Virus record (IMG/VR): IMGVR_UViG_3300021964_009390
Location: 1-64,000 of that record
Strand: one strand, 5' to 3'
DNA: 64,000 nt
In this document: positions 5,757 to 51,497 of the stretch, piece by piece
Layout of the letters: every line of letters starts with the position of its first letter
Position numbering within the stretch: the first letter of the stretch is position 1
Made by a program: the position numbers and the translations under genes
Notes under the pieces: model-generated
Seen by the model: the letters and a program-made list of their open reading frames with translations, nothing else
What the model was told of the DNA's origin: nothing
The model's database searches: none

Positions 5757-5789
5757 ACACCGGTCTTAACCGACCGGTGTTTCTTTTTG
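5757..5789 (+). terminator. Intrinsic terminator after the major capsid gene, probably bidirectional
   Basis: Stem ACACCGGTC/GACCGGTGT with a 6-nt loop, followed by TTCTTTTT. The clpC stop codon lies in the loop. A second hairpin TAGAGCGT/ACGCTCTA sits at 5719-5747. Confidence 0.85.
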
Positions 5790-8228
5790 TTCAATTACAA
5801 TCTCGTCGTCATGTAGCTTGATTACTACATCAGTTGTCCGCTCATTTTTTAAAATGTATTTAGCGAGTGGAGTCTGTATATGTGTTTGTATAGCACGTCT
5901 CAACGGCCTGGCCCCGAATTTGCTATCAAACCCTCGATCAACTAACATATTCCTCACCGGCCTGGTGATTTCTAAGTTGATCTGTTTCATATTCATACGG
6001 GTTATAAATTTTTTCAACTCACTATTCAAAATCTTTTTACATACATCCAATGTGAGACTGTTAAACATTACAATTTCATCCAACCGGTTTAAAAATTCCG
6101 GACGTAGATATTGCTGCAATTGTTTCTTCACATTGTCTAAATTATCCTGTTCATTAGAACCAAACCCTACTACATGATTTTTCTGCATCCGATCCGCACC
6201 GATATTAGACGTCATTAAAATGATACAATTTCTAAAATTAATAGTCACTCCTCGGCTATCAGTCAACTGCCCCTCATCTAACAATTGCAACAACAACTGC
6301 ATCACATCCGGATGTGCTTTTTCTATCTCATCAAACAATACAACACTGTATGGATTGTACCGTATTTGCTCGGTAAGTTGCCCACCCTCACCGTAACCAA
6401 CATAACCCGGAGGACTGCCAATCAATTTGCTGACAGAATGTGATTCCATTAATTCGCTCATGTCCACACGAATCATATTATCCATGTCCCCGTATATATG
6501 TTCCGCTAGTTGTTTGGCTAGATATGTTTTACCCACACCTGTAGGTCCCATCAACAAGAATGACCCAACAGGTTTACCCGGTTCATTGACATCAGTACGA
6601 CCACGTATCACACTGTCGCAAATTAAATTTACTGCTTGCTGTTGCCCTATCACCTTTTTATTAATGGTTCTTTCTAGCGACAGCAGCTTTTTACTCTCGC
6701 TACGTTTCAAATGCTGCAACGGGACCCCGCACCAGTTGCTTACTGTTTTACGTATATCTTCTTCTGTTATGGTAGTGGTTTTCTGATTATTTTTCACCCG
6801 TTCTAATGCATTGTATTTTTTCTTACGTAATCGCTTCTCCGCTTCTCTGTATGTTGCAGCTGCGATATAATCATCTTTATCTAGAAACTCATGAATCAAC
6901 TGTACGCTGTCCTGAATTTTTTCATCTATAGACAATACCGACTTGGGTATCTTACCCTTAGCTAATTTGACACGAGCTGCACATTCATCTAGTACATCTA
7001 TCGCTTTGTCTGGAAAAAATCTATCTGATATGTACCGTTCACTCAAACTAACAGCCGCTTCTATCGCATCCGGTGTGAACTCTACACTATGAAAGTCTTC
7101 ATATTTATATTTCAACCCATCTAGTATGTCTATAACCATATCATATTCCGGTTCATCTACAACAATTTTTTGAAATCTACGCTCAAGAGCACCATCACTT
7201 TCTATAAACTCTCTGTATTCATCAAATGTAGTTGTACCGATACAGCAAATACCACCTCTACTTAACGCAGGTTTTAAAATATTGGCGGCATCCATAGCAC
7301 CGTCCGCGTTACCAGCTCCAACTAACATATGGATCTCATCAATAAACACAATAGCGTTGTCAATATTGAGTAAATCATCCATGACCTGTTTCATACGCTC
7401 TTCAAACTGTCCGCGGAATTTTGTACCAGCCACCATCAAAGACAAATCTAGATTGTATATGTTTTTGTCTTTCAATTGTACCGGTACTAGATCGGAGGCA
7501 ATCAAATTGCACAAACCTTCTACAACAGCAGTCTTCCCCACTCCCGGTTCACCTACTAGCACCGGGTTGTTCTTTTGCCGGCGGACTAGAACTTGCATAA
7601 CGCGTTCAATTTCCGAGTCTCTACCAATCACAGGATCTAGCTCCCCTTGTTTGGCAAGTTCTGTCATGTTGCTGCTGAACATACGCAAAGCTTCACCTGG
7701 TGCCACAGTTGTTTCTTCCCCTCCGGTACCAACATTTTGCTCTTCGTTTTTTGTACCCCCGTTTTCGATTTGTGGATTTAAATAAGCCCGTAGGCTTTGT
7801 GCTAATTCCGGAAGATCTACACTATGTTCATATAGAAAATTAAAAGCTGGGCATTCTGTATGACATACAACCCCTAGAAATATATGCTCGGTACCTATAA
7901 ATGAATGGTCCATTTTGATACTAATGTTCCTGGCGATTTGCAACACCTTGTCAACATCATCAGAAGCGGGGATCTTTATTTTAGCTTCTAGTTTAGGATC
8001 CACTTTTTTGATGTCTAAATTGTCTAGGTAATGATCCAAACGCTCGATTAACCGCGATACATCCACCCGCTGTTCGTTTGCTAGTATGTCACATATGTAA
8101 CTGCCTTGTGTGTTTAGTGTAGCATACAACAGATGTAATGTGTTGATCTCACCATGGTTATATTTCTTGGCTGTGATTTGAGCTGCCGCTAATAAATCGC
8201 TAGCGCGAGGTGTAAAATTATACATCAT
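5766..8228 (-). CDS. clpC: ClpC/ClpA-type AAA+ unfoldase (ClpP partner)
   Basis: Double Clp-N domain, two Walker A motifs (GEPGVGKT, GPTGVGKT), pore loops GTKFRG and GYVGY, short UVR-like middle domain, VGF ClpP-docking tripeptide. Confidence 0.92.
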   Translation of the reverse strand: MMYNFTPRASDLLAAAQITAKKYNHGEINTLHLLYATLNTQGSYICDILANEQRVDVSRLIERLDHYLDNLDIKKVDPKLEAKIKIPASDDVDKVLQIARNISIKMDHSFIGTEHIFLGVVCHTECPAFNFLYEHSVDLPELAQSLRAYLNPQIENGGTKNEEQNVGTGGEETTVAPGEALRMFSSNMTELAKQGELDPVIGRDSEIERVMQVLVRRQKNNPVLVGEPGVGKTAVVEGLCNLIASDLVPVQLKDKNIYNLDLSLMVAGTKFRGQFEERMKQVMDDLLNIDNAIVFIDEIHMLVGAGNADGAMDAANILKPALSRGGICCIGTTTFDEYREFIESDGALERRFQKIVVDEPEYDMVIDILDGLKYKYEDFHSVEFTPDAIEAAVSLSERYISDRFFPDKAIDVLDECAARVKLAKGKIPKSVLSIDEKIQDSVQLIHEFLDKDDYIAAATYREAEKRLRKKKYNALERVKNNQKTTTITEEDIRKTVSNWCGVPLQHLKRSESKKLLSLERTINKKVIGQQQAVNLICDSVIRGRTDVNEPGKPVGSFLLMGPTGVGKTYLAKQLAEHIYGDMDNMIRVDMSELMESHSVSKLIGSPPGYVGYGEGGQLTEQIRYNPYSVVLFDEIEKAHPDVMQLLLQLLDEGQLTDSRGVTINFRNCIILMTSNIGADRMQKNHVVGFGSNEQDNLDNVKKQLQQYLRPEFLNRLDEIVMFNSLTLDVCKKILNSELKKFITRMNMKQINLEITRPVRNMLVDRGFDSKFGARPLRRAIQTHIQTPLAKYILKNERTTDVVIKLHDDEIVIEQKETPVG

Positions 8229-8267: not shown

Positions 8268-8876
8268 TCATATTTTTTTAACAAAAAATGGTTCCCATTC
8301 CTCCCTGTAGTGTTTAAACACATGGAGATAGGGAAGCGGTTTTATTGGTGCTAGCTCGTTTCCGGCCACGTCTTTGAATGGATATATATTACCACGTGTG
8401 TTATTACAAGGCTTACATGTGAGAGTCAAATTAAAATCATCGTTTGTACCGTGTAAGCTTTTAGGTAATATATGCTCCACACTCATGTCACATATTGGTT
8501 TCTTATTACCGCATATCTGGCAACGACCGGAATAACGTTTGTACATGTATTTGACTGTAGGCTTGATTTTACAATTATAACTCCACTTAGATGTAGTCAA
8601 TAAAATAGTCGGTACAGGATATTTAGACTTGTTCGTTCGGACATACGGTTGATTGTTATATAACTCCCCCGGTGATGATTCGACCCATTGATCCCAGTTT
8701 TTAATGTTACTATGACTATCTATAACAAACACAGAACATTGAGTCCTAGATTTACCTTGGTCTCGGACTATTTTATGTACACTCTCCCGAGCTGATGTGA
8801 CTCCGATAGGTGTCCAAAACTTTGATAAGATCAATGTTATACTATCATACGGGTCACATATATATCCAACGCTCAT
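8268..8876 (-). CDS. HNH endonuclease (probable start MSVGY at 8876)
   Basis: RYSGRCQICG...SVEHILPKSLHGTNDDFNLTLTCKPCNNTRGN. Confidence 0.85.
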   Translation of the reverse strand: MSVGYICDPYDSITLILSKFWTPIGVTSARESVHKIVRDQGKSRTQCSVFVIDSHSNIKNWDQWVESSPGELYNNQPYVRTNKSKYPVPTILLTTSKWSYNCKIKPTVKYMYKRYSGRCQICGNKKPICDMSVEHILPKSLHGTNDDFNLTLTCKPCNNTRGNIYPFKDVAGNELAPIKPLPYLHVFKHYREEWEPFFVKKI

Positions 8877-8929
8877 ATATGTATATTTATATGTTGATAA
8901 TGCAGCTTCTACATTATATAATATGTTAT

Positions 8930-9730
8930 ATGAAAATTGAAGTTTCTCATGAGAGCCCGTTAAGCCTTTTAGATAAATCATTAGAATACAACGACTATTG
9001 TTACGCATTAGTACATCTGTTCGAACAATACCCGGAATATTATAATTTCTTCAAAAATGCAAAAGATGTTCATGACAAATGTGTGTATCTAGACAACAGT
9101 ATATTCGAACTAGGTACCAGCTTCGAACCTAAAAGTTACAGCAAATGGATAGAACAGCTGCAACCTAATGTGTATATCGTTCCGGACACATTAGAGGATG
9201 GTAAGGAGACAATTACACAATTTTATACATTCACTGGTGAATACACGAGTTTACCAGGTATAAAGATGGGAGTGGTTCAAGGTAAGACATATGATGATCT
9301 AGTTAGATGTTACAGTTTCATGAGCGAGTATGCAGATATTGTTGCTATAAGCTTTGACTATTCATACTATTTATCCACCGGAGTGGGTAACACTAAACTA
9401 GAAAGGTACATGAATGGTCGTAAAAAATTTATACAAGATTTAATAAATGAAAATCGATGGAACTGGGCAAAGCCAGTACATTTACTAGGTTGTAGTTTGG
9501 CTAGAGAATTCACATACTATGTAGACAACAACATACACAACATCAGAAGCTGTGACACATCAAACCCGATAGTTGCATCTATGTTCGATTTAAAATACAA
9601 TGATGAATGGGGATTGAATGAGAAACCATCGCAAAAATTAGCGGATATGTTAGAAGCAAACTTGAATGACGACCAAATGGAACTTTTAGAGTATAATTTG
9701 AAAATGTTTAAGAAAATTTTAAGAAGATGA
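8930..9730 (+). CDS. TGT-fold (tRNA-guanine transglycosylase-like) protein, DpdA-like candidate (probable start MKIEVSHE)
   Basis: YLDNSIFELG, IVPD, MGVVQG, HLLG and SCDTSNP match TGT barrel motifs; adjacent to QueF. Subfamily is inferred. Confidence 0.7.
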   Translation: MKIEVSHESPLSLLDKSLEYNDYCYALVHLFEQYPEYYNFFKNAKDVHDKCVYLDNSIFELGTSFEPKSYSKWIEQLQPNVYIVPDTLEDGKETITQFYTFTGEYTSLPGIKMGVVQGKTYDDLVRCYSFMSEYADIVAISFDYSYYLSTGVGNTKLERYMNGRKKFIQDLINENRWNWAKPVHLLGCSLAREFTYYVDNNIHNIRSCDTSNPIVASMFDLKYNDEWGLNEKPSQKLADMLEANLNDDQMELLEYNLKMFKKILRR

Positions 9731-10272
9731 CACGTGACCGTCCATGGATAGCCTTGTACAGTCATACTGGGTCTGAAATAGTAAATGTATCTAAAAAATT
9801 AGGAGCCCTTCCGGACCTGGTAGTAACAAACAACGATCGATCACTCATACATGTCAAACATTCACTCCGGACAGCATCTAAACCATCAGCAGTTGATTAC
9901 CGAACTGTATTCGACACTGTCGGTGAGAATCCAATAGTCACGCTGCATGGATGGATGAGAATTATTCCCGGTGAAATCTGCGAAGAATATGATATATACA
10001 ATTTGCACCCTGGGTTGATAACCAAATATCCAGAGCTCAAAGGTAAGGACCCGCAGCAAAGGGTATTTGAAATGCTAAACTCGCCACAATATGTTGGCTG
10101 TGTGTTACATCGAGCCATTGCTGAAGTAGATGCCGGTGATATTATCATGACCCGGAGCGTGTTCAACACATACATGTCCGTACATACATTGACAGATGTA
10201 TTGCATGAAATGGCCGGGTCAATGTGGGTAGATTTTTTCGAAAGAGAATTATATGATGAATCAAACCTTTAA
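9727..10272 (+). CDS. PurN-like formyltransferase (DpdN-like candidate)
   Basis: LHGWMRIIP, YNLHPGL and GCVLHRAIAEVDAGDII are 10-formyl-THF transferase motifs. Confidence 0.85.
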   Translation: MTRDRPWIALYSHTGSEIVNVSKKLGALPDLVVTNNDRSLIHVKHSLRTASKPSAVDYRTVFDTVGENPIVTLHGWMRIIPGEICEEYDIYNLHPGLITKYPELKGKDPQQRVFEMLNSPQYVGCVLHRAIAEVDAGDIIMTRSVFNTYMSVHTLTDVLHEMAGSMWVDFFERELYDESNL

Positions 10273-10537
10273 GTTAAAACCAATAAAAACCCCAGACGGT
10301 AAAATACACATAAGGGAAGTGTATTACACCTCAACCGGGTCGATATGCGATATAGAGATGCAAGTAAAACATCCATACACTGGTGATCGAGTGAAAGATT
10401 TAGAATATTTGAAACCACTATATTACAATGTGGAACAGTTCGGAATGTATGATGACCGAGTCATAAAATATGATCCGGACAATGACACTTTGGTTGAATG
10501 GGAATTACAAGAAGATGGTACCGTGGAGACATCTTAA
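10253..10537 (+). CDS. Hypothetical protein
   Basis: ORF with overlapping start/stop inside the operon. Confidence 0.55.
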   Translation: MMNQTFKLKPIKTPDGKIHIREVYYTSTGSICDIEMQVKHPYTGDRVKDLEYLKPLYYNVEQFGMYDDRVIKYDPDNDTLVEWELQEDGTVETS

Positions 10538-10695
10538 CAATCGAGGAAAATTGATGGTACTGTGTGTACCGTTAAACATGTACATAGCGATACTGTATGC
10601 TACAGCTGGAAGTTATCTCGCAATATTACCGGTATGTGCAGCGGCAATATGTGGCATGGCTACATATAATAAGAAATATCAAATTTACAATACAG

Positions 10696-11064
10696 ATGAG
10701 CAACCAAAATCAACAGACTCCCGAGAATAGACAATTCACCACCGGTGCGCAACGTGACACAGGAGAAGGTAAACTTCGAATGAGTTTAGTACCACAACAG
10801 GAATTAAAACGTGTAATGAAGCGTTACCTAGACGGTGCAAAAAAATATGGGGAGAACAACTGGATGAGAGGCATGCCGTTGAGTGTATATTACGATTGCG
10901 CGCATAGACATCTGGATGCATGGTGGCGTGGTGATGATGGAGAAGATCATGCAGCAGCTGTAGTATGGAACATGCTATGCGCCATGTGGACAGAAGCAAA
11001 CCACAATGATGATGAACATTTAGGGGATGGTTTAAATGATAAGTGGAAATTCCCTAGTGATTAG
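10696..11064 (+). CDS. dATP/dGTP diphosphohydrolase domain protein (DUF5664-like)
   Basis: FTTGAQRD..GKLRMSLVP, GAKKYGENNWMRG, RHL.AW..G...EDHAAAVVWN. Confidence 0.85.
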   Translation: MSNQNQQTPENRQFTTGAQRDTGEGKLRMSLVPQQELKRVMKRYLDGAKKYGENNWMRGMPLSVYYDCAHRHLDAWWRGDDGEDHAAAVVWNMLCAMWTEANHNDDEHLGDGLNDKWKFPSD

Positions 11065-11079
11065 TTTATAATATATACA

Positions 11080-11637
11080 ATGTTAATTAGTTTCACAGGT
11101 GCGCAAAGTACTGGTAAGAGTACACTATTAGAACGTATGGTGAGTGATGTAAAATTTAGAAAATGTTCATTCATCAAAGAAGTTACACGTAAAGTTGCCC
11201 GGCAAGGAGTGAATATAAATGACTCTGGTGACAATATAACTCAGCTATTGATATTATCAGAGCATATAAACAATCATATCATGCGCGGTTGCACGGTTTT
11301 AGATCGGTGCATAGTAGATGGCTTGATATATACTGAATGGTTGTATAATGAAGGCAAAGTAGACAAATGGGTATATGAATATGCTGTCAACTTACACAAC
11401 GCATTATTACCTAAACTAGACATTATATTTTATACAAACCCAGCAGATGTACCATTAGTAAACGATGGTCAGAGGAGCGTGAACAAAGAATTTAGGGAGG
11501 GTATAATACGGCTATACAACGAATATTACGAGTGTAACACTATAGCTAGAGACAAGACTGTAACATTATCAGGCACAGTTGATCAAAGATACAAAACCAT
11601 TACAAACACTTTAAAAAATCATGACACAACTAGATAA
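11080..11637 (+). CDS. P-loop nucleotide monophosphate kinase-like protein (AAA_28/NadR-like)
   Basis: ISFTGAQSTGKSTL Walker A and VLDRCIVD motif. Confidence 0.8.
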   Translation: MLISFTGAQSTGKSTLLERMVSDVKFRKCSFIKEVTRKVARQGVNINDSGDNITQLLILSEHINNHIMRGCTVLDRCIVDGLIYTEWLYNEGKVDKWVYEYAVNLHNALLPKLDIIFYTNPADVPLVNDGQRSVNKEFREGIIRLYNEYYECNTIARDKTVTLSGTVDQRYKTITNTLKNHDTTR

Positions 11638-12535
11638 TTCACATATTAGCAAAGTGCTGGGACAAACTGTTGATTACCCAGATCAATATGACCCTACTAT
11701 ACTGGTCAGAGAACCAAGGATCAACAATAGGCAACACTTGGATATACACGATGACAACCTACCTTTTGTAGGTTACGACACATGGAACGCGTACGAAGTA
11801 AGTACTCTGACTACAAAGGGTCTCCCGGTGACTGGAGTATTGAAAATAGTATATCCTTGTGATAGTAAATACATAGTAGAGAGCAAAAGCATCAAACTGT
11901 ATTTGAACTCATTCAATATGTTCAACTGCGGAGACACTAGACAACAGTCAATAACAAATCTAGTGAATGCGGTTAGACGGGATTTGGGTGAATTGCTACA
12001 AACCACTGTACAAGCTGAGTTTATTGATGACAATAATAGGACCAACCCAGAACCAGTGTTTGGTGAAATGTATCATTACAGTAGTTTAGAGTATGACCTG
12101 GTACCAGGAGATACGATTGACGATAGCGACTTCACTATATACGAGGAAACCCCGGGAATATTGAAGAGTCATAATGTGACACAGAGTGTACAAGTATTTA
12201 AATCTGGATTGTTGAAGAGCAATTGCCGTGTGACTAGCCAACCTGACTGGGGAGATGTATTTGTTTACATACTAGGTAACAAACACGTTACATATGAAAG
12301 TATGTTGGAGTACATTGTTTCGTTTAGAAATGAATGTCATTTCCATGAAGAAATATGCGAGACAATTTACAAGAGATTGTCCACATTACTATCACCGGAC
12401 GAATTGTGTGTTACATGCTTGTATGCGAGAAGGGGTGGCATAGATATAAATCCAACCAGAGCGTCACACGAACATTTACTACCACAGAATTTGATAGACC
12501 CTAAAATAGAGCACTGTAAAACACAAAAACAGTAG
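11621..12535 (+). CDS. queF: NADPH-dependent 7-cyano-7-deazaguanine reductase, long (type II) form
   Basis: IVESKSIKLYLNSFN, LKSNCRVTSQPDWG (catalytic Cys and Asp), FHEEICE, RRGGIDINPTR. Confidence 0.93.
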   Translation: MTQLDNSHISKVLGQTVDYPDQYDPTILVREPRINNRQHLDIHDDNLPFVGYDTWNAYEVSTLTTKGLPVTGVLKIVYPCDSKYIVESKSIKLYLNSFNMFNCGDTRQQSITNLVNAVRRDLGELLQTTVQAEFIDDNNRTNPEPVFGEMYHYSSLEYDLVPGDTIDDSDFTIYEETPGILKSHNVTQSVQVFKSGLLKSNCRVTSQPDWGDVFVYILGNKHVTYESMLEYIVSFRNECHFHEEICETIYKRLSTLLSPDELCVTCLYARRGGIDINPTRASHEHLLPQNLIDPKIEHCKTQKQ

Positions 12536-14892: not shown

Positions 14893-16959
14893 ATGAGCCA
14901 ACAAGACATTTATAATTTATCCGACCTATTAACATCTACTGCATCAGAAACTGATTATGGTGCCTTGAATTGGACTGGTACTTTTGACGAATACCTGGAC
15001 ATAGTGAATGAAACTCCAAAAGTAACTAGGAACTCATATCAGCGTATGTATGACATGGTAATGTCCCATGGTACAGAGGAAGTCAATTACTGTAAACAAA
15101 CATATACAAAATATAAATTTTTCGCTAGCGGTAAGGATGGTGACATAAGTATTTACGGTTTGGAAGAACCGTTGATGGAACTTGTAGATGTATTGAGATC
15201 CGCTGCGTATCACTATGGACCAGAGCGCAGAATCATATTGCTGCACGGTCCAGTAGGTAGTAGCAAATCGACGATAGTAACCACATTGAAAAAGGGATTA
15301 GAACAATATTCAATCACCGATCCATTGTATTCATTCACCTGGTGTGTGGAAGATGATAATGGTACACCAGTTGAAGTTCCATGCCCCATGAATGAAGAGC
15401 CATTGAAATTGTTACCGGAAGCCGCTAGGAAGAACATTGTTGAACGTATCAACAATTCACTAGCCAACGATGATTATAGAATCAAACTAGATGGCAATTT
15501 GTCACCAGTGTCCGAGTTTTACAGAGATAAGTTGCTGAAAAAATATAACGGTGATTTTAACAAAGTACTATCACACGTCAAAGTGAGACGTGTTATATTG
15601 TCTGAAAAATCAAGAGTAGGTATAGGAACATTTCAACCGAAAGATGAAAAGAGTCAAGATGCTACTGAATTAACAGGCGACATAAACTACAGAAAGCTAG
15701 CTCAATATGGTAGTGAGAGTGACCCACGTGCTTTTGACTTTGATGGTGAATTTTTGATATCAAACAGAGGCATGGTTGAGTTTCAAGAGATCCTCAAATT
15801 GCAAACAGAGTTTTTGTACGACCTCTTGGGAGCCACGCAAGAGCATCGAGTCAAGCCTAAACGATTCAATCAAGTACCGATAGATGAAGTGATTATAGGT
15901 CACACCAACAACGCAGAATATGACAAGCTGAAAAACAATAAGTTCATGGAGGCTCTACGTGACAGAACCATAAAAATAGATGTACCGTACTTACTGAAAA
16001 TAAATGATGAGAAAAAAATATACGATTATTTCTACAATCAACACACGGTACACAAACACATCGCACCACATACTACATATCTTGCTGCGCTGTATGCAGT
16101 AGTGTCACGTCTAGAAAAACCGGTCAAGAATGACATGAGTATAATCCAAAAAGCAAAATTGTACAACGGAGTTGGTGTACATGGTTTCACAGAAGAACAT
16201 GTCAAGGAGATGTTAGAAGAGACACCTAACGAAGGTTTGTTGTCTGGTGTGAGTGCGCGTTTCATACAGAATCAATTTAGTAACGCTATTGTGAACCCTA
16301 GGATGGGTAAAAAAAGTATCAATCCTTTCATGCTGTTCTCGCAAATACGAGACGGTATCAAAAATTATTCCGGTTTCAACAGCGAGGATCTGCGCGCTGA
16401 AGCGTTAGAAAGATTGGAACTAGTCGAGAAAGAATATGACCGTATAGTGAAAAGAGAGGTACAACAAGCGCTCAGCAGTAGTGAAGAGGCCATCAAAACG
16501 TTGTGTACAAATTATATTGACAACGTTGTTGCTTTTGTAAACGATGAAAAGGTGACCAACCCCATTACTGGTAAAGATGAACCGGCTAATGAAAAGATGA
16601 TGAGATCTATTGAGGAAAAAATAAATGTCTCTACCAATATGAAAGAAGATTTCCGTCGTGAGATCATGAATTATATGGGTTCACTGGCAGCAAAAGGTAA
16701 GTCATTTAAATACGATAGTAACGAGCAATTGCATAAAGCCCTAGAAAAGAAGTTGTTTGAAGATATTAAAGACAGTATCAAACTATCCGCGCTGGCACAA
16801 GACACGGCCACTGTGGTAGACAAGGAGTTACTTGATAAAATCAACGCACTCAAGCAACGACTGGTGAAAGACTTTGGGTATGATGAAGATAGTGCTCATG
16901 ATGTTCTCGTGTATGTGGGGAGTATATTTGCCCGAGGTGACGACGTAGGAGACAAGTAA
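14893..16959 (+). CDS. prkA: PrkA/YeaG family AAA+ serine kinase
   Basis: LLHGPVGSSKST, GELxGDIN..L..YGSESDPRAFDFDGEF..SNRGMVEFQEILK, EALRDR, SGVSARF. Confidence 0.93.
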   Translation: MSQQDIYNLSDLLTSTASETDYGALNWTGTFDEYLDIVNETPKVTRNSYQRMYDMVMSHGTEEVNYCKQTYTKYKFFASGKDGDISIYGLEEPLMELVDVLRSAAYHYGPERRIILLHGPVGSSKSTIVTTLKKGLEQYSITDPLYSFTWCVEDDNGTPVEVPCPMNEEPLKLLPEAARKNIVERINNSLANDDYRIKLDGNLSPVSEFYRDKLLKKYNGDFNKVLSHVKVRRVILSEKSRVGIGTFQPKDEKSQDATELTGDINYRKLAQYGSESDPRAFDFDGEFLISNRGMVEFQEILKLQTEFLYDLLGATQEHRVKPKRFNQVPIDEVIIGHTNNAEYDKLKNNKFMEALRDRTIKIDVPYLLKINDEKKIYDYFYNQHTVHKHIAPHTTYLAALYAVVSRLEKPVKNDMSIIQKAKLYNGVGVHGFTEEHVKEMLEETPNEGLLSGVSARFIQNQFSNAIVNPRMGKKSINPFMLFSQIRDGIKNYSGFNSEDLRAEALERLELVEKEYDRIVKREVQQALSSSEEAIKTLCTNYIDNVVAFVNDEKVTNPITGKDEPANEKMMRSIEEKINVSTNMKEDFRREIMNYMGSLAAKGKSFKYDSNEQLHKALEKKLFEDIKDSIKLSALAQDTATVVDKELLDKINALKQRLVKDFGYDEDSAHDVLVYVGSIFARGDDVGDK

Positions 16960-18083
16960 TGCCCGGTCGCCGGATACGAGAAGATCACAGTGAATATCGT
17001 GATCTAATCAAAGACAAAGTAAAAAGCCGAGTCAAAGATCATATCAAAACCGGTAAAAAAGTCAAACGTCATGGGAAAGACTTGGTTGTTGTAGATATAC
17101 CTGTTATAGATCTACCGTCATTCCGCCATGGGAAAAGTAAATCTGATGGTGGTGTAGGTAACGGTCCAGTGGATGTAGGGGACGAAGTAGGTGATGGTCC
17201 ACAACAACCCGGAAAGGGTCAAGCTGGTGATCAACAAGCGGAGCATACAATGGGTGTAGGTGTTACTGTCGAAGACTATATTGATGTACTAGGTGATGAA
17301 CTAGAATTACCACGTCTAGTACCTAAACTGAGAGGTGATATAATAAATCAAAAGGTCAAATATAACGGTATTAGTCGAGTTGGTAACAATTGTCTGCTAC
17401 ATAAAAAGAAGACATTGAAAAATGCAATGAAACGCGTGATGTCTACCGGGTTATATAATCCTGACAATATATCTAATGTGTACCCAATAACACAAGACAA
17501 GGTATATAAAACATGGAACGTTGTTGACTCACCGGACATAAACGCAGTAGTATTTTTTTTACAGGATATAAGCTGGAGTATGGATGGTGAGAAAAGAGAT
17601 CTAGTAAGAGAACTATGCTGGTATCTGGAACAATGGATAAGAAAATTTTACAATCAAGTCGATTTAAAACATATTGTACACGATGTAGTGGCTCAAGAAG
17701 TTGATCAAGAAAAATTTTACAGTTTTGAAGCTGGAGGTGGTACCAAGATAAGCTCCGCCTTCGAATTGACGTCGGATATTATAGATAGTTCCTACCCGGC
17801 CGAGGATTGGAACATGTATGTCTTTTATTTCTCCGATGGTGAAAATTTTTCAAATGACACTAAGAGATGTATACAGTTATTAGAACAATTGCAAACCAAA
17901 TGCAATTTGATAGGGGTTGGAGAAGTCAAAGGTGTTACGGATTGGGCCGATTTCGCGCTATCAATAGAAGAGGAAATAGACAATAAAGTCCTAGACGAGG
18001 GTGTTATAACCACAAGCTCGATCGATTCACATGATGATGTGTTACGCGCAATTCAAGAATTTTTATCACCGGTTTCACGATGA
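16959..18083 (+). CDS. yeaH: YeaH/YhbH (DUF444) vWA-domain protein
   Basis: Gly-rich linker, MIDAS-like DISWS, GGTKISSA, YFSDGEN; translationally coupled to prkA. Confidence 0.9.
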   Translation: MPGRRIREDHSEYRDLIKDKVKSRVKDHIKTGKKVKRHGKDLVVVDIPVIDLPSFRHGKSKSDGGVGNGPVDVGDEVGDGPQQPGKGQAGDQQAEHTMGVGVTVEDYIDVLGDELELPRLVPKLRGDIINQKVKYNGISRVGNNCLLHKKKTLKNAMKRVMSTGLYNPDNISNVYPITQDKVYKTWNVVDSPDINAVVFFLQDISWSMDGEKRDLVRELCWYLEQWIRKFYNQVDLKHIVHDVVAQEVDQEKFYSFEAGGGTKISSAFELTSDIIDSSYPAEDWNMYVFYFSDGENFSNDTKRCIQLLEQLQTKCNLIGVGEVKGVTDWADFALSIEEEIDNKVLDEGVITTSSIDSHDDVLRAIQEFLSPVSR

Positions 18084-19690
18084 GACGTACAACATCTAGC
18101 AATTTATTACAACAGGGTGTAGGTACCGAGCTAGCCAAGCAAATCCCGGAGATCATTGATGTATGTAAAAAGGAAGGATTGGACCCATACGAACTGGTTA
18201 TTGAAGAATATACTGCTGACGAGATTGCGGAACTAGGAGCCTATGGTGGGTTCCCCGTGAGATACCCACACTTTTCATTTGGTCAGCAATACGAAACATT
18301 ACACCACCAGTATCACAGTGGTATGGGTAAGATATATGAAATGGTTGTGAATAACGATCCTACATACATGTATTTGCAGCGAAACAATCCAATAGTGGAC
18401 AATTTGACAGTTGTCGCTCATGCATTAGCACATTCTGATTTTTTTAAAAATAATATATACTTTGGTAACACCAACCGAAACATGATGAATGTGATGGCTA
18501 ACCATGGTCAAAAAATCCGGCAGTATATGAATATATACGGTAAATCTCGAGTGTCTAAATTTTTAGATGCCTGTTTGTCTGTCGATGATTTAATAGACCC
18601 GAACATTGTGTGGTCGGATCAACAATATAACAAACCTACAATAACGGAATTTGCACCACCGATAGAACAATTCACTCCGAAGCGTATAGGTACCAATCAT
18701 TACATGGACCATTATGTGAATACAGCCAAATTTTTAGAGAAGCAGCATAAATCACATTTGAGACAAAAAGCTCGCGCAGACAGTAAATATCCTTTGAAAC
18801 CAGTGAAAGACATACTGTTGTTCATACTACAACATGTCCGAATGGAACGCTGGCAGCAAAACATATTATCCATGGTACGTGACGAGAGCATCTATTTCCG
18901 TCCGCAAATGTTGACAAAAGTGTTAAACGAAGGTTGGGCTAGTTACTGGGATAGTTACATCATGACCAAATGTGGTTACGCAGGTGATGAAGGTATAATA
19001 CAATACGCGCAACACCATTCAGGGGTGTTAGGTGGTAAATATGCAATGAGTAACCCGTACAGATTGGGTAACTGTTTGCTCCGTCATGTGGAGGATCGAT
19101 GGAACAAAGGGCAGTTCGGCCGGGCATGGGACAACTGTGATGACGAATTCAAAAGAAAATCATGGGACACTAAAGCTAGTCAAGGTCGCGACAAAATATT
19201 TGAAGTTCGTCGCGATTATAATGACGTTAATTTTATAAACGAATTTTTTACACCGGAATTTTGTGACGAGCATGAATATTTTGAATACCAATTGGACCCG
19301 GAAACAAACAAATACGTGGTTGTGAGCAAGGATTATGACAAAATTAAATCTAAATTGCTGCAACGTTACACGAATGGTGGTCGCCCTAGTATAGTGCTCA
19401 CAAATTTTGACAAGTCTGGTATAGAATTGAGACATCGGTATGAAGGCATGGAACTAGAGAGTAATTATGTTGAAAGTACCATGAAGATGTTGTATAATAT
19501 TATAAATATGCCAATTGTATTGAAATCCAAAGCGTATGTATCTAAAAAGAAAAAGGTATATGGTGCAGTGTTTGCTGTCGCGGAAGAGGAAGAAGAACTA
19601 TGTGGTCGTGTGTTTAAATATGATGGTAAGACGTTCAAGTCATGGGAAGACTACAAACAACGTGACTTTCCCAACTACCAAATTACATGA
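18080..19690 (+). CDS. spoVR: SpoVR/YcgB family protein
   Basis: GGFPVRYPHFSFG, IYEMVVNNDP, AHALAHSDFFKNN, TKVLNEGWASYW, NPYRLG. Confidence 0.93.
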   Translation: MRRTTSSNLLQQGVGTELAKQIPEIIDVCKKEGLDPYELVIEEYTADEIAELGAYGGFPVRYPHFSFGQQYETLHHQYHSGMGKIYEMVVNNDPTYMYLQRNNPIVDNLTVVAHALAHSDFFKNNIYFGNTNRNMMNVMANHGQKIRQYMNIYGKSRVSKFLDACLSVDDLIDPNIVWSDQQYNKPTITEFAPPIEQFTPKRIGTNHYMDHYVNTAKFLEKQHKSHLRQKARADSKYPLKPVKDILLFILQHVRMERWQQNILSMVRDESIYFRPQMLTKVLNEGWASYWDSYIMTKCGYAGDEGIIQYAQHHSGVLGGKYAMSNPYRLGNCLLRHVEDRWNKGQFGRAWDNCDDEFKRKSWDTKASQGRDKIFEVRRDYNDVNFINEFFTPEFCDEHEYFEYQLDPETNKYVVVSKDYDKIKSKLLQRYTNGGRPSIVLTNFDKSGIELRHRYEGMELESNYVESTMKMLYNIINMPIVLKSKAYVSKKKKVYGAVFAVAEEEEELCGRVFKYDGKTFKSWEDYKQRDFPNYQIT

Positions 19691-21308: not shown

Positions 21309-21542
21309 TTTATACTACAGATATATAAATATACACATGGAAATAGATCGTATAGAGGTCAAAAAAATTATTGAACAAGAGGTAAAACCTAATGAAAATT
21401 TAATAGTATGGACAGATGCATATATACGAGGTATAAAAAAAACATTCGATGAGCAAAAATTAGTGTATAATGTGGAGTCAGAAGTTGCTAAACAACGTAT
21501 CATAACGTACGTTATGGAACGTCTAGAAAACGAACTCAGAGA

Positions 21543-21881: not shown

Positions 21882-21888
21882 AGGTACA

Positions 21889-41157: not shown

Positions 41158-41165
41158 TGCTTAAT

Positions 41166-49003: not shown

Positions 49004-51052
49004 ATGAAAATAATACACCATGTCACTATGTGGGCCATGTCAGTAGGTACAGTTACCGGTGGAGAGTTGTGGTTCAACAACGGAAAAATGCTAGAAGGAG
49101 AAATACTAGAAGCGAACAACACTCACGTACTGTTCGCGCGCGCGTCCGATCTACAACAATTCAGATTCAGCAAAGAGCTACTGACACTAGACAGTCAAAA
49201 ATTAATAGAGCTATATTATAACACAAACAGATATGGTGAAATTCCACAGGTCAAAACACCGTTAGACGATCGAACATTACAAATCTACACCAATCGTATA
49301 GATCAATTGATCGAGAACCGTTTGAGAGGCCTGAAAAAGAGACCCACTGCAAAAGCTGATGATAATACATGGGTGAGAAGGGTGTATTTGACCACGATTG
49401 GTCGTATACCCAATAGACAAGAGGTCGCGGAGTATCTGAACGATAGAGACTCTCAAAAGAGGGACAAACTGATACAGAAGCTGCTGTCTGGTCCCGGTCA
49501 TGTGACACATCAATTGAACTGGCTGAGCGATTTGTTACGAGTCAAAGATCGTCTGGACGGAGTCAACATAAACGTAGGTGGTGTATACAGGGAATGGCTC
49601 CGACAGCAATTGCAAAACAATGTACCGTGGGACCAGTTTGTGAGAAGTTTGTTGGATAGTGAGGGTGATTTATTCGGTAACAATCCGGCCGCCGGTTATT
49701 ATCTACGAGACAGAGGCATGCAACAAGACAACATAGCGCACACTGTACAAATATTTTTAGGTACACGTCTCGAATGCGCCATGTGTCACAACCACCCGTT
49801 CGACAGATGGACACAAAAAGAGTTTTACGAGATGACCGCATTCACTAGCGGTGTTGGGGGAGTGACTAGAAGCGCTAGGAGGCAACCGTTGAGAGATTTG
49901 AATAGAATGATAAGCAGAGATGGTACACCCCTTGCAGGTAAGTTACAAAATTGGAGAAACGTAGTGAGAGATTCTATACAGTTTGGTGTAGACACAAACG
50001 GTACTGGTAAAATAAAATTGACAGATGAGTTTATGGAAAATGATGCCAAGCCAGGCGACACACTACATGCTAAAGCCATGTTCACACCACATACCTACAT
50101 AGACCCTGAGGATAAAAACCCTAGAAGTCTCACCATACTGGCAAAATGGTTGACTGATCGGAACAACCCGCGGTTCACCACCGTGATAGCCAATAGATTG
50201 TGGAAGAACGTATTTGGTGTAGGTGTAATAGAACCAGTCGACAATTTTATGGATAGCACCATCCCGGAAAACACAGACCTCATGTGGTTTATTGAAAGAA
50301 TATTAGTTAGTGTCAATTATGACATGAGAGAATTCCAACGAGTGTTGTTGAATACCAAGCTGTTCTCTAGAGAGAGCAAACCGACTGATTACGAGAGTCT
50401 GGAAACTTATGATTTTTCTGGACCAGTGTTACGTCGAATGACCGGTGAGCAACTATGGGATTCATTGGTCACTCTAGTATACAACAACATAGACACGAGT
50501 GACAGAGTGTACATACAAAATCAGTCTGCTGTGTATGTGAACATATACAACAAGTACAAGGATTGGAACGGTACAGCCATATATCAAGACCTGGTTCGGA
50601 TAGCTCAAGCCAACCCAGATCAGAGACGGTTGGAAGATTCATTCAAACAAGAGTCTAGCGACGTGAAACCGATACCAGACAGAGGTCTGATTCGAAGCAG
50701 CTATTTGTCGTATCCAGCACCAGGGGGTCACTTGATAAGGCAGTTTGGTGGTAGTGATAAATTGGCAATTGAGAACAGCAACAGTGAACCAAACACAACA
50801 CAAGTGTTAAACTTGTTGAACGGATTTGTAGAGAAAAATATATTGAACAACAAAAAGGCGGATTTTATCAAAAGCATGCAAGCTGAGAAAAACTCGGTCA
50901 AGCAAATTGAAGATGTGTACATGTCTGTGTTGGCACGTAAACCAACCAGTCAAGAGTTACGTGAGCTGAAAGATATACTAAAAGAAGAGAATGGATACAA
51001 ACACGTCGCATGGATATTGCTCAACACCCACGAGTTTATGTTTATACAGTAA
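49004..51052 (+). CDS. DUF1549/DUF1553 (PSD1/PSD2) protein with N-terminal signal and SHD1-like domain
   Basis: ADD.TWVRRVYL..IGRIP, FLGTRLECAMCHNHPFDRWTQKEFY, NPRFTTVIANRLW, RRMTGEQLWDS, QVL.LLN, W.LLNT.EF.F. Confidence 0.9.
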   Translation: MKIIHHVTMWAMSVGTVTGGELWFNNGKMLEGEILEANNTHVLFARASDLQQFRFSKELLTLDSQKLIELYYNTNRYGEIPQVKTPLDDRTLQIYTNRIDQLIENRLRGLKKRPTAKADDNTWVRRVYLTTIGRIPNRQEVAEYLNDRDSQKRDKLIQKLLSGPGHVTHQLNWLSDLLRVKDRLDGVNINVGGVYREWLRQQLQNNVPWDQFVRSLLDSEGDLFGNNPAAGYYLRDRGMQQDNIAHTVQIFLGTRLECAMCHNHPFDRWTQKEFYEMTAFTSGVGGVTRSARRQPLRDLNRMISRDGTPLAGKLQNWRNVVRDSIQFGVDTNGTGKIKLTDEFMENDAKPGDTLHAKAMFTPHTYIDPEDKNPRSLTILAKWLTDRNNPRFTTVIANRLWKNVFGVGVIEPVDNFMDSTIPENTDLMWFIERILVSVNYDMREFQRVLLNTKLFSRESKPTDYESLETYDFSGPVLRRMTGEQLWDSLVTLVYNNIDTSDRVYIQNQSAVYVNIYNKYKDWNGTAIYQDLVRIAQANPDQRRLEDSFKQESSDVKPIPDRGLIRSSYLSYPAPGGHLIRQFGGSDKLAIENSNSEPNTTQVLNLLNGFVEKNILNNKKADFIKSMQAEKNSVKQIEDVYMSVLARKPTSQELRELKDILKEENGYKHVAWILLNTHEFMFIQ

Positions 51053-51071
51053 ATTGAATCAAATTAGTACC

Positions 51072-51497
51072 ATGAAAAAACACGACAGTATAGATGCATC
51101 AATATTAAAAACATTACCTAACCCAACCACTGGTGCATATGAAATTAAAATAAAAATCCCAGAATTTACATTTTTAGGGGTCAAAGAACAACCGGATTTC
51201 GCAGATACATACCTGAGTTTTTACCCTAAAGACAAAATAATTGAGTTGAAAAGCCTTAAACAATATGTGTACCAATTGAGAGATATTGTTGTTTCATACG
51301 AGAGGTTGATTAATGTATTTTACGATCACGTAATGGGTGTTTATCAGCCTGAGAGACTTAGGGTTGTAATGGTGTTTAACCCGCGTGGTGGTATAACATC
51401 GAAATTGACTATAGATTCTGATTGGTCAGTCAGAGGCGGTGAAGAAAAATTTAAAGACTGGACTAACAAAAACGAACAGTGGAACATAACACTATAA
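51072..51497 (+). CDS. QueF type I-fold protein lacking the catalytic Cys
   Basis: LPNP..YEI.I..PEFTFLGVKEQPDFA..ELKSLK.Y....SYE..RGGI. The canonical CP..G.PDF is replaced. Confidence 0.75.
   Translation: MKKHDSIDASILKTLPNPTTGAYEIKIKIPEFTFLGVKEQPDFADTYLSFYPKDKIIELKSLKQYVYQLRDIVVSYERLINVFYDHVMGVYQPERLRVVMVFNPRGGITSKLTIDSDWSVRGGEEKFKDWTNKNEQWNITL

What the first reader, a model, noticed from the sequence alone, without database searches (positions are those of the whole stretch)
8930..12535. Complete-looking 7-deazaguanine DNA hypermodification cluster predicting formylated preQ1
Seen, tightly co-transcribed: a TGT-fold protein, a PurN-like formyltransferase, a dGTP/dATP diphosphohydrolase, an NMP-kinase-like P-loop protein and an intact QueF. 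Known: QueF reduces preQ0 to preQ1, phage DpdA-family TGTs put 7-deazaguanines into DNA, and a PurN-like formyltransferase (DpdN) has been linked to 7-(formylamino)methyl-7-deazaguanine in a Flavobacterium myovirus. Inference: the dGTPase and kinase point to a pre-replicative route (deplete dGTP to dGMP, exchange the base, re-phosphorylate) with extensive G replacement. FolE/QueD/QueE/QueC are not in this window, so preQ0 is made elsewhere in the genome or taken from the host.
Basis: partly seen in the sequence, partly recalled or inferred. Interest (0 to 1): 0.82.

Follow-up and report, generated by a model that had tools for sequence, protein, structure and literature searches.

The report
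Phage gene set for formyl-preQ1 DNA
An uncultured estuarine T4-like jumbo phage carries a close counterpart of the only gene set known to replace every guanine in phage DNA with a formylated 7-deazaguanine. Its constant partnership with a nucleotide-type kinase suggests that the modified base is built into nucleotides before replication, not swapped into finished DNA.

Summary
Window 8930-12535 (+ strand) carries, with overlaps or short gaps:
- a 266-aa TGT/DpdA-fold protein;
- a PurN-like formyltransferase;
- an orphan 94-aa ORF;
- a MazZ-2/DUF550-type dATP/dGTP diphosphohydrolase;
- an AAA_28 nucleoside/nucleotide-kinase-fold protein;
- an intact bimodular QueF.

[quoted passage not shown] That phage's DNA is published as 100% 7-(formylamino)methyl-7-deazaguanine. 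The transglycosylase is therefore DpdA3, not DpdA1, DpdA2 or DpdA4.

The window is the first 64 kb of a 222-kb IMG/VR contig. Walking along that contig found FolE, QueD, a QueE-like gene, QueC with a glutamine amidotransferase ORF, and a Gpt-like phosphoribosyltransferase. preQ0 is therefore made by the phage.

This is a new member of a known kind. The family is large and almost entirely viral.

The pre-replicative route is unproven and contradicts the published proposal. Comparative data favour it:
- The kinase follows DpdA3 in 65 of 66 close loci and 37 of 49 diverse loci.
- Among cultured phages, full-length kinase homologues occur only in DpdA3 carriers.
- An NTP pyrophosphatase or HD hydrolase recurs in these clusters.

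The parts
8894..8922 (+). Promoter-like site (TTGATA, 17 nt spacer, TATAAT) just upstream of the first gene
   Evidence: Consensus scan, 11 of 12 matches. The number of such sites in the region equals the shuffle expectation, so this is weak evidence.
8930..9730 (+). DpdA3-family guanine/7-deazaguanine transglycosylase: a minimal TGT-fold TIM barrel of 266 aa
   Evidence: 44% identity to immuto DpdA and CP220 gp056. PHROG 19058, E 4e-54. Model pLDDT 93.4. Best folds are DpdA 7ui4 and TGT. Three Asp (D55, D86, D209) are invariant across 57 diverse family members. There is no Cys cluster for a Zn site.
9727..10272 (+). DpdN-type PurN-like formyltransferase (181 aa)
   Evidence: Formyl_trans_N, E 6.8e-10. 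44% identity to immuto DpdN. GAR transformylases are the best PDB hits. N92, H94 and D135 are invariant and align with PurN N106, H108 and D144.
10253..10537 (+). 94-aa ORF of unknown function, specific to this genome
   Evidence: No Pfam or PHROG hit. No homologue in 91 related loci. It is called as a gene in the JGI and ENA records.
10597..11064 (+). MazZ-2/DUF550-type dATP/dGTP diphosphohydrolase (likely start 10696, about 122 aa)
   Evidence: PF18909, E 7.5e-22, 77.6 bits against a cut-off of 27. PHROG 801 'dATP/dGTP pyrophosphohydrolase'. Relatives are 110-135 aa and 69-84% identical.
11080..11637 (+). AAA_28 P-loop kinase with a deoxynucleoside / NMP kinase fold (185 aa)
   Evidence: AAA_28, E 9.2e-12. 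PHROG 2107. 30-32% identity to immuto gp203 and CP220 gp057. Model pLDDT 88.9. Best folds are deoxyadenosine kinase, the NadR ribosylnicotinamide kinase domain, dCK, dNK and thymidylate kinase.
11621..12535 (+). Bimodular (type II) QueF, the NADPH-dependent preQ0 reductase
   Evidence: QueF_N plus QueF. 49% identity to immuto QueF. E 9.5e-46 to V. cholerae QueF, with the catalytic Cys, Asp, His and the QueF motif conserved.
50991..51497 (+). Unimodular QueF-like paralogue without the catalytic Cys. It lies directly after QueF in some relatives, so it is probably linked to the pathway.
   Evidence: PF14489, E 1e-17. Aligned to B. subtilis QueF it has Gly at the Cys55 position and Tyr at the His position. 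It is adjacent to QueF in L004 and other loci and keeps the same Gly there.

Best explanation
The block is the insertion and tailoring half of a phage pathway that replaces genomic guanine with 7-(formylamino)methyl-7-deazaguanine (fdPreQ1).

Shown by homology:
- FolE, QueD, QueE and QueC, encoded about 135-160 kb further along the same contig, make preQ0 from GTP.
- QueF reduces preQ0 to preQ1.
- DpdA3 is the TGT-fold base exchanger.
- DpdN is a PurN-type formyltransferase with its catalytic Asn, His and Asp intact.

Inferred (about 0.5 for this layer): the exchange happens on a free deoxynucleotide or deoxynucleoside, not on finished DNA.
1. The MazZ-2-like enzyme turns dGTP into dGMP. This both removes dGTP and supplies the deoxyribose-phosphate.
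2. DpdA3 swaps guanine for preQ1.
3. DpdN formylates the aminomethyl group, either before or after the swap. dPreQ1-MP resembles PurN's substrate GAR.
4. The dedicated kinase phosphorylates the non-canonical (deoxy)nucleoside or nucleotide that host kinases would not handle.
5. The phage polymerase incorporates the triphosphate.
6. The released guanine could be recycled to GMP, and on to GTP, by the phage Gpt-like phosphoribosyltransferase.

The logic mirrors T4 gp56 / gp42 / gp1 and the MazZ / PurZ / DatZ cluster of Z-genome phages.
For: Identity of the cluster:
- Orthology and shared gene order with the immuto_2-6A block: DpdA3 44%, DpdN 44%, kinase 30%, QueF 49%.
- Immuto virion DNA is 345,000 fdPreQ1 per 10^6 nucleotides with no dG detected (PMC10516641).
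- TGT/DpdA fold.
- FolE (1e-72 to immuto FolE), QueD, a QueE-like protein and QueC (PF06508, 2.4e-59) lie on the same contig.

Nucleotide-level route:
1. The kinase directly follows DpdA3 or DpdN in 65 of 66 close IMG/VR loci and in 37 of 49 diverse loci.
2. In 50,697 phage records, full-length kinase homologues occur only in Campylobacter and immuto phages. These are the same phages that carry DpdA3; 19 of 20 DpdA3 records have the kinase.
3. CP220 has DpdA3 next to the kinase but no QueF or DpdN in the 18.7-kb stretch viewed. This points to DpdA3, rather than QueF, as the kinase's partner.
4. The kinase has a small-molecule deoxynucleoside / NMP kinase fold.
5. An NTP hydrolase recurs beside DpdA3 in three forms: MazZ-2-like here, a PRA-PH/MazG-like protein in immuto, and an HD domain fused to a kinase in CP220.
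6. The MazZ-2/DUF550 family is known to make dGMP for nucleotide-level base conversion (PMC8342488).
7. DpdA3 is a bare 266-aa barrel. It aligns over about 230 residues to TGT (residues 27-360) and to DpdA (residues 2-406) and has no Zn-site Cys cluster, so it lacks 100 or more residues present in the enzymes that bind nucleic acids.
8. DpdA3 phages show complete G replacement. DpdA3 alone failed in E. coli. ADG nucleoside was seen in CP220-infected cells (PMC10516641). Modified dGTP was proposed for Campylobacter phages (PMC6884629).
Against: - Every characterised member of the TGT/DpdA superfamily acts on a polynucleotide.
- Cui et al. [quoted passage not shown]
- 13 related clusters run DpdA3-DpdN-QueF-QueC with no kinase within 6 kb.
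- The MazZ-like gene is present in only a minority of clusters.
- The co-occurrence counts come from few independent lineages.
- The two DpdA3-DpdN fusion proteins are singletons and could be sequencing artefacts.
- No transcript, nucleoside or enzymatic data exist for this uncultured phage.
- The Cys-less QueF paralogue and the amidotransferase ORF beside QueC could change the final product.
Confidence: 0.55

Rival explanations
1. Same cluster and same product, but post-replicative. DpdA3 exchanges guanine for preQ1 (or preQ0) in newly made phage DNA, as DpdA1, DpdA2 and bacterial DpdA do. DpdN then formylates dPreQ1 in DNA. The kinase and the diphosphohydrolase serve general nucleotide-pool management.
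For: - This is the published view for DpdA3 (PMC10516641).
- The closest solved fold is the DNA preQ0 insertase DpdA.
- 13 clusters lack the adjacent kinase.
- DpdM, the sister tailoring enzyme, is proposed to act on DNA.
Against: - It does not explain why a small-molecule kinase is tied to DpdA3 across Campylobacter, Flavobacterium and marine T4-like phages and is absent from all other cultured phages.
- It does not explain why NTP hydrolases recur in the cluster.
- Complete replacement of about 20% of all bases by an enzyme that forms a covalent DNA intermediate is demanding. Known DNA-level DpdAs reach 0.1-30%.
- DpdA3 expressed without its partners was inactive in E. coli.
Confidence: 0.3
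2. The cluster modifies DNA, but the final base is not fdPreQ1. It could be plain dPreQ1, an archaeosine-like amidine made with the amidotransferase ORF next to QueC, or a further-decorated derivative.
For: - The genome has a class II glutamine amidotransferase ORF immediately after QueC, recalling the Gat-QueC of phage 9g that is linked to dG+.
- It has a second, Cys-less QueF paralogue.
- DpdN activity has never been shown biochemically.
Against: - DpdN keeps all catalytic residues and is 44% identical to the immuto protein.
- The only phage with this gene set that has been analysed has 100% fdPreQ1.
- QueC-amidotransferase pairs sit in many clusters that also hold QueF and DpdN. This fits a role as an ammonia supplier for QueC.
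Confidence: 0.12
3. The genes do not act on DNA at all. They boost host queuosine or tRNA modification, or NAD(P) supply, with the AAA_28 protein acting as a NadR-like ribosylnicotinamide kinase feeding NADPH to QueF.
For: - AAA_28 is modelled on the NadR kinase domain, and NadR is among the fold hits.
- The genome has two CTP_transf_like (NMNAT-type) genes.
- Phages with preQ0 genes but no DpdA were once proposed to boost tRNA queuosine.
Against: - A DpdA3 orthologue is present, and DpdA is the published signature of DNA modification.
- CP220 keeps DpdA3 next to the kinase with no QueF in the stretch viewed.
- The DpdA3 family is almost confined to viruses: only 18 loci in 185,579 species genomes, nearly all in MAGs.
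Confidence: 0.03

Closest known systems
[quoted passage not shown]
   Same: The same four genes occur in the same order at 30-49% identity. A MazG-superfamily NTP pyrophosphatase and a Gpt-like phosphoribosyltransferase are present in both genomes. Both encode the FolE to QueF pathway. Both are aquatic myoviruses.
   Different: - Here the preQ0 genes are dispersed 135-160 kb away instead of lying just upstream.
- The NTP pyrophosphatase is of the MazZ-2/DUF550 type and sits inside the block (immuto has a PRA-PH-type gene upstream).
- This genome adds an orphan 94-aa ORF, a Cys-less QueF paralogue and an amidotransferase ORF after QueC.
- The backbone is a T4-like jumbo phage of 222 kb or more with a gp23-type capsid.
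- No chemistry has been measured here.
Campylobacter Firehammervirus (CP220) dADG system
   Same: A DpdA3 orthologue (44%) is immediately followed by the same AAA_28 kinase (32%), with a phosphohydrolase just upstream. G replacement is reported as complete.
   Different: According to the cited paper, CP220's pathway stops at CDG. No QueF or DpdN was seen in the 18.7-kb stretch viewed. Its product is 7-amido-7-deazaguanine. Its hydrolase is an HD domain fused to a second kinase.
Z-genome cluster MazZ/PurZ/DatZ (S-2L, phiVC8, SH-Ab 15497)
   Same: It uses a MazZ-2/DUF550 dGTP/dATP diphosphohydrolase to deplete a canonical dNTP and supply dGMP for a nucleotide-level base conversion. Replacement is complete.
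   Different: The conversion enzyme is PurZ (adenylosuccinate-synthetase-like) and the target base is adenine. No transglycosylase is involved.
T4 hydroxymethylcytosine pathway (gp56 dCTPase, gp42 dCMP hydroxymethylase, gp1 dNMP kinase)
   Same: The proposed logic is the same: dNTP pyrophosphatase, then modification at the dNMP level, then a dedicated kinase, then the polymerase. (This comparison rests on textbook knowledge; it was not tested here.)
   Different: The enzymes are unrelated and the target is a pyrimidine. For T4 the route is experimentally proven.
DpdA1, DpdA2 and bacterial DpdA (phage 9g, CAjan, Salmonella Dpd system)
   Same: The TGT-superfamily fold and the 7-deazaguanine substrate.
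   Different: Those proteins match Pfam TGT (PF01702) and are larger (413 aa for 7ui4). They insert preQ0 into DNA post-replicatively at 0.1-30% or less. From my own knowledge, not checked here, their published clusters include no kinase.

Membership tests
DpdA3 (Cui et al. 2023) | Sequence homology to CP220 gp056 / immuto gp206 (the phiST CGPG_00065 group) | tested here: met
   44% identity over 94% of the length to the immuto protein (E 5e-58), and 44-45% to Campylobacter phages.
DpdA3 (Cui et al. 2023) | Distant TGT/DpdA fold | tested here: met
   Model pLDDT 93.4. Foldseek gives TGT E 4.5e-8 and DpdA 7ui4 E 2.5e-5. VIA-align gives Z 17.3. Three Asp are invariant at barrel-strand ends. hhalign to E. 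coli TGT was weak (probability 12%) but aligned the VVQGK and HLLGC motifs to the TGT IIQGS and YLMGVG motifs.
DpdA3 (Cui et al. 2023) | Co-encoded with 7-deazaguanine synthesis genes | tested here: met
   QueF is in the block. FolE, QueD, a QueE-like protein and QueC are on the same contig.
DpdA3 (Cui et al. 2023) | Complete replacement of G in virion DNA | not testable with these tools
   The phage is uncultured. The listed runs are held only as assembled contigs.
DpdA1 / DpdA2 / bacterial DpdA | Match to Pfam TGT (PF01702) | tested here: not met
   No Pfam family at E 0.01 or better. No PDB sequence hit even with a 37-sequence profile.
DpdA4 (archaeal viruses) | Match to PF20314 (DUF6610) | tested here: not met
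   No Pfam hit.
DpdN | PF00551 formyltransferase grouping with immuto YP_010114479.1 and co-encoded with DpdA and QueF | tested here: met
   Formyl_trans_N E 6.8e-10. 44% identity, E 1e-52, to immuto DpdN. It is adjacent to DpdA3 and QueF.
DpdN | PurN catalytic Asn, His and Asp | tested here: met
   N92, H94 and D135 are invariant in 23 DpdN sequences and align with E. coli PurN N106, H108 and D144.
DpdN | Formylation of preQ1 or dPreQ1 | not testable with these tools
   The activity has not been shown biochemically for any DpdN.
QueF type II | Two T-fold modules, the QueF motif, and catalytic Cys, Asp and His | tested here: met
   QueF_N plus QueF. The alignment to V. cholerae QueF 3bp1 conserves ESKS-KLY, NC...QPDWG and FHE.
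MazZ-2 / DUF550 dATP/dGTP diphosphohydrolase | Match to PF18909 above the gathering score | tested here: met
   77.6 bits against a cut-off of 27.
MazZ-2 / DUF550 dATP/dGTP diphosphohydrolase | Substrate preference (dGTP and/or dATP, sparing the modified dNTP) | not testable with these tools
   No PDB sequence relative at E 0.01 or better. The metal-binding acidic residues were not mapped.
Deoxynucleoside / NMP kinase superfamily (AAA_28) | P-loop kinase fold with a small-molecule acceptor site | tested here: met
   AAA_28. Fold matches to dAK, dCK, dNK, the NadR kinase domain and TMPK have TM 0.65-0.72. Whether the acceptor is a nucleoside or an NMP could not be decided.

The most novel reading that the evidence does not exclude
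DpdA3 would be the first TGT-superfamily enzyme that works on a free deoxynucleotide or deoxynucleoside instead of a polynucleotide. Together with its dedicated kinase, and where present a dGTP pyrophosphatase, it would form a purine counterpart of the T4 hmC and Z-genome routes. This pre-replicative pathway would make fdPreQ1-dNTP for the phage polymerase. It would explain why only DpdA3 phages reach 100% G replacement and why DpdA3 alone failed in E. coli. On this reading, hundreds of aquatic T4-like and other phages (580 or more IMG/VR loci) would carry G-free genomes.
Probability: 0.45. Interest if true: 0.8.

Novelty: new member of a known kind. Interest (0 to 1): 0.5.

Why it matters
The cluster itself is a new, uncultured member of a system described in 2023, so the annotation alone is ordinary. 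Three things add value.

1. It places the fdPreQ1-type pathway in a 222-kb estuarine T4-like jumbo phage. It also shows that the DpdA3 family is very large and virus-restricted: 1,360 clusters at 50% identity, 580 or more IMG/VR loci, and DpdN in most of the diverse clusters. Fully G-substituted DNA may therefore be common in aquatic viromes. That matters for restriction and CRISPR evasion, for sequencing bias, and for nanopore basecalling.

2. The comparative data make an open mechanistic question directly testable: is complete 7-deazaguanine replacement pre- or post-replicative? The data name the candidate partners (kinase, NTP pyrophosphatase) that earlier heterologous tests left out.

3. 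If the nucleotide-level route is real, it offers an enzymatic source of 7-deazaguanine dNTPs.

Tried and rejected
- Megablast of the block against 50,697 phage records found nothing.
- Pfam and PDB sequence searches of DpdA3 found nothing. hhalign against a single E. coli TGT sequence was weak (probability 12%), so fold evidence rests on the predicted model.
- Net charge and pI of DpdA3 (4.99) do not discriminate, because E. coli TGT is also acidic.
- Using immuto QueC as a query to pull the window's own QueC from IMG/VR failed: the 80 loci returned were all immuto-like. QueC was then found by walking along the contig.
- The walk covered about -7.6 to 178 kb. The stretch from 178 to 222 kb was not examined.
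- Sequencing runs: the DNA holders are kept only as assembled contigs, so no base-calling signal at G can be read. No RNA run was listed.
- The DpdA3-DpdN fusion proteins were considered as Rosetta-stone evidence. I downgraded them because each is a singleton on one short contig.
- I considered that the kinase might be a NadR-type ribosylnicotinamide kinase serving QueF's NADPH demand. I rate this unlikely because CP220 keeps DpdA3 next to the kinase with no QueF in the stretch viewed.
- The second formyltransferase in the window (48236-48934) is a sugar N-formyltransferase in a glycan cluster, not a DpdN.
- Four searches of the held paper library found no published nucleotide-level pathway for DpdA3. 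Papers outside that library were not searched.

Full report
**Where the window comes from.** The window is identical to the first 64 kb of IMG/VR contig IMGVR_UViG_3300021964_009390, which is JGI Ga0222719_10000014 (222,461 bp). A near-identical ENA contig of 230,007 bp starts about 7.5 kb further upstream. The DNA is found in estuary and marine metagenomes. The backbone is a T4-like myovirus, with a gp23 major capsid protein, prohead protease and scaffold just upstream of the finding and a T4-type portal further upstream. Its capsid protein is only about 33% identical to the nearest cultured phages, which are cyanomyoviruses.

**The observation.** On the + strand between 8930 and 12535 lie six ORFs that overlap or are separated by at most 59 nt.
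- 8930-9730: a 266-aa protein with no Pfam hit.
- 9727-10272: Formyl_trans_N.
- 10597-11064: PF18909 dGTP_diPhyd_N. The start is probably 10696, since relatives are 110-135 aa.
- 11080-11637: AAA_28.
- 11621-12535: QueF_N plus QueF.

A strong sigma-70-like site sits at 8894-8922, and no + strand terminator-like site lies within the block. Co-transcription remains an inference, because no RNA run was listed.

**The TGT-like protein is a DpdA3.**
- tblastn finds it in only 20 of 50,697 phage records. These are the four immuto Flavobacterium phage records (44%, annotated as DNA guanine transglycosylase), the Campylobacter CP220 group (44-45%), and two distant hits. The first two groups are the phages for which Cui et al. 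2023 defined DpdA3.
- A 37-sequence alignment gave an AlphaFold model with pLDDT 93.4.
- Foldseek ranks tRNA-guanine transglycosylases first (E 4.5e-8) and bacterial DpdA 7ui4 at E 2.5e-5.
- VIA-align gives Z 17.3 for DpdA and about 17 for TGT, with about 230 residues aligned at 3.1-3.2 Å. Unrelated TIM barrels score 14.9 or less.
- Across 57 members down to 33% identity, D55, D86 and D209 are invariant. They lie in motifs LDNS-FEL, PD and DTSNP.
- I read these three Asp as counterparts of the three catalytic or recognition Asp of TGT. Only the two motifs between them (VVQGK and HLLGC) were actually aligned to TGT, and weakly.
- The protein has no Cys cluster for the TGT zinc site. It lacks 100 or more residues that TGT and DpdA have within the aligned span.
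- It matches neither PF01702 (DpdA1, DpdA2, bacterial DpdA) nor PF20314 (DpdA4).

**The whole block is orthologous to the immuto block.** In immuto_2-6A the order is MazG-like hydrolase, hypothetical, DpdA3, hypothetical, formyltransferase (DpdN), 'thymidylate kinase', QueF. QueD, QueE, a phosphoribosyltransferase and FolE lie just upstream. blastp identities to the window proteins are 44% (DpdA3), 44% (DpdN), 30% (kinase) and 49% (QueF).
- DpdN keeps the PurN catalytic Asn, His and Asp. Its N-terminal S-x-T-G-S-E loop aligns with PurN's G-N-G-S-N loop. From my own knowledge, that PurN loop binds the GAR phosphate.
- QueF keeps the QueF motif and the catalytic Cys, Asp and His.
- Immuto DNA was measured as fully substituted by fdPreQ1. 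The prediction of formylated preQ1 therefore rests on orthology to an experimentally characterised system.

**preQ0 supply.** No FolE, QueD, QueE or QueC is in the window. Walking along the contig with exact-protein look-ups and IMG/VR fetches found:
- a Gpt-like purine phosphoribosyltransferase at about 75.7 kb, orthologous to immuto gp211 (E 6e-17; best PDB hits are xanthine-guanine PRTs);
- NrdA and NrdB at about 104-108 kb;
- QueD and a QueE-like protein at about 147-148.5 kb, with a second AAA_28 kinase nearby;
- FolE at about 152.3 kb (1e-72 to immuto FolE);
- family-B DNA polymerase at about 165.6-168.1 kb;
- QueC at about 171.1 kb (PF06508, 2.4e-59), immediately followed by a class II glutamine amidotransferase ORF.

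The QueE assignment is below NCBIfam's curated cut-offs, but only QueE models are hit. Positions 178-222 kb were not examined. The pathway from GTP to preQ1 is thus phage-encoded but dispersed.

**Size and shape of the family.**
- The 5.8-billion-protein index returns 3,130 hits, none named and none with a Pfam domain.
- An exhaustive search of 50%-identity representatives finds 1,360 clusters at E 1e-3 or better.
- IMG/VR holds at least 580 loci.
- In 185,579 species genomes there are only 18 loci, all but one in MAGs. The family is essentially viral.

**Gene neighbourhoods of DpdA3.**

| Set of IMG/VR loci | Loci counted | Kinase | QueF | DpdN | MazZ-like |
|---|---|---|---|---|---|
| Close clade, 3.5 kb or more of downstream sequence | 66 | 65 | 63 | 36 | 14 |
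| More diverse set, 3 kb or more on both sides | 49 | 37 | 42 | 39 | 3 |

- A few contigs in the close set were fetched twice.
- In the diverse set there are also FolE 30, QueE 32, QueD 27, QueC 27, amidotransferase 15, PRT 12 and MazG-like 8.
- The diverse loci are often one compact cluster: QueE-(PRT)-QueD-FolE-(MazG)-DpdA3-DpdN-kinase-QueF-QueC-amidotransferase.
- Thirteen loci have DpdN followed directly by QueF, with no kinase.

**How it most likely works.** The pathway steps up to preQ1, the base exchange and the formylation follow from homology. The open question is the substrate of DpdA3.

Evidence for a nucleotide-level, pre-replicative route:
- The kinase is the near-constant neighbour of DpdA3.
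- Among all cultured phages, full-length kinase homologues exist only in DpdA3 carriers.
- CP220 keeps DpdA3 next to the kinase with no QueF or DpdN in the stretch viewed. This points to DpdA3 as the kinase's partner.
- The kinase model (pLDDT 88.9) matches deoxynucleoside kinases, the NadR ribosylnicotinamide kinase domain and thymidylate kinases. All of these are small-molecule kinases.
- A dedicated kinase is needed only if a non-canonical (deoxy)nucleoside or nucleotide exists, as with T4 gp1.
- Three unrelated NTP hydrolases recur next to DpdA3: MazZ-2-like here, PRA-PH/MazG-like in immuto, and an HD domain fused to a kinase in CP220.
- The MazZ-2/DUF550 family is the enzyme that turns dGTP into dGMP for PurZ in Z-genome phages.
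- DpdA3 is a stripped barrel without the extra elements of the tRNA- and DNA-acting relatives.
- The literature reports complete replacement only for DpdA3 phages, failure of DpdA3 alone in E. coli, free ADG nucleoside in CP220-infected cells, and an earlier proposal of a modified dGTP for Campylobacter phages.

Evidence against:
- All characterised TGT and DpdA enzymes act on polynucleotides.
- Cui et al. propose post-replicative insertion.
- Some clusters lack the kinase.
- The MazZ-like gene is accessory.
- The lineages sampled are few.

I put the pre-replicative reading at about 0.5 and the post-replicative one at about 0.3. Whether the exchange is on dGMP (which fits MazZ) or on deoxyguanosine (which fits the dNK-like fold and the CP220 HD domain) cannot be decided here. 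The Gpt-like PRT fits either model, as a recycler of released guanine into GTP for FolE.

**Comparison with what is known, and novelty.** This is a new member of the DpdA3/DpdN kind. Its variant features are:
- an internal MazZ-2-type gene;
- dispersed preQ0 genes;
- an orphan ORF;
- a Cys-less QueF paralogue;
- a T4-like jumbo backbone.

Four searches of the held literature up to late 2026 found no paper describing a nucleotide-level DpdA3 pathway. A December 2025 paper still cites 7-deazaguanine as the example of nucleic-acid-level modification. The identification is ordinary. The comparative pattern is what makes it worth a bench test.

Noticed in passing
window 50991-51497 (+): A second, unimodular QueF-like protein. 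It has Gly at the catalytic Cys55 position and Tyr at the His position, so it cannot be a nitrile reductase. It sits directly after the bimodular QueF in relatives such as L004 and keeps the same Gly there.
   Followed up: partly
L195:15584-16964 (contig about 171.1-172.5 kb): QueC is immediately followed, with a 35-nt overlap, by a class II glutamine amidotransferase ORF. The same QueC-amidotransferase pair occurs in 15 of 27 diverse DpdA3 clusters that hold QueC. It could supply ammonia to QueC, or it could be a split version of the Gat-QueC linked to archaeosine DNA.
   Followed up: partly
L099:12642-13166 (contig about 75.7 kb): A Gpt-like purine phosphoribosyltransferase, orthologous to immuto gp211, which lies inside the immuto deazaguanine cluster. 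It is present in 12 of 49 diverse DpdA3 clusters. It may recycle released guanine or ribosylate a 7-deazaguanine base.
   Followed up: partly
P0165, P0166 (447 aa each): Two independent predicted proteins fuse DpdA3 to DpdN. Each is a singleton on one short contig, so they may be real fusions or frameshift artefacts.
   Followed up: partly
L220, L221, L224, L227, L235, L237, L240, L251, L253, L272, L292, L293, L297: Thirteen compact clusters run DpdA3-DpdN-QueF-QueC with no kinase between or nearby. This sub-group would be a natural control for the role of the kinase.
   Followed up: no
window 8268-9008 (-): An HNH homing-type endonuclease lies between the ClpB-like gene and DpdA3. Relatives such as L016 have ClpB and DpdA3 only 89 nt apart, so this is a recent insertion.
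   Followed up: partly
window 5766-8228 (-): An 820-aa ClpB/ClpA-type double-AAA chaperone is encoded by the phage. It is conserved next to the DpdA3 block in several relatives (37-40% identity).
   Followed up: no
window 14893-19690 (+): A complete PrkA / DUF444 (YeaH) / SpoVR operon, normally a bacterial starvation-response module, lies inside a phage genome.
   Followed up: no
window 19687-22548, 29457-43267, 46949-48934, 53415-54383, 61079-63945, and on to about 103 kb and 130-139 kb of the contig: A very large glycan-building repertoire. It includes NeuB, a cytidylyltransferase, GDP-mannose dehydratase-type enzymes, a sugar aminotransferase, a sugar N-formyltransferase, a methyltransferase, many glycosyltransferases (GT2, GT10, GT25, GT47-like, GT61, GT90), at least ten sulfotransferases and an APS kinase. 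The target (virion, host surface or DNA) is unknown.
   Followed up: no
window 49004-51052 and 58513-59781 (+): DUF1549/DUF1553 (PSCyt2/PSD1) and DUF1501 proteins. From my own knowledge this pair is typical of Planctomycetota and Verrucomicrobiota. It is unusual in a phage and may hint at the host.
   Followed up: no
window 24037-24459 (+) and 44376-44879 (-): A NUDIX hydrolase and an inorganic pyrophosphatase. Either could take part in nucleotide-pool reshaping; the pyrophosphatase would pull the MazZ-type reaction forward.
   Followed up: no
L113:12559-13245 (contig about 145.3-146 kb): A second, more distant AAA_28 kinase (228 aa) lies close to QueD and QueE. Campylobacter phages also carry two copies.
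   Followed up: no
window 1077-1532 (+): A TnsA-like endonuclease N-terminal domain protein lies inside the head-morphogenesis module.
   Followed up: no
L110:686-1282 (contig about 128.6-129.2 kb): A DUF366 protein lies beside a tail/helicase region. From my own knowledge this family is mostly archaeal. Its function is unknown.
   Followed up: no
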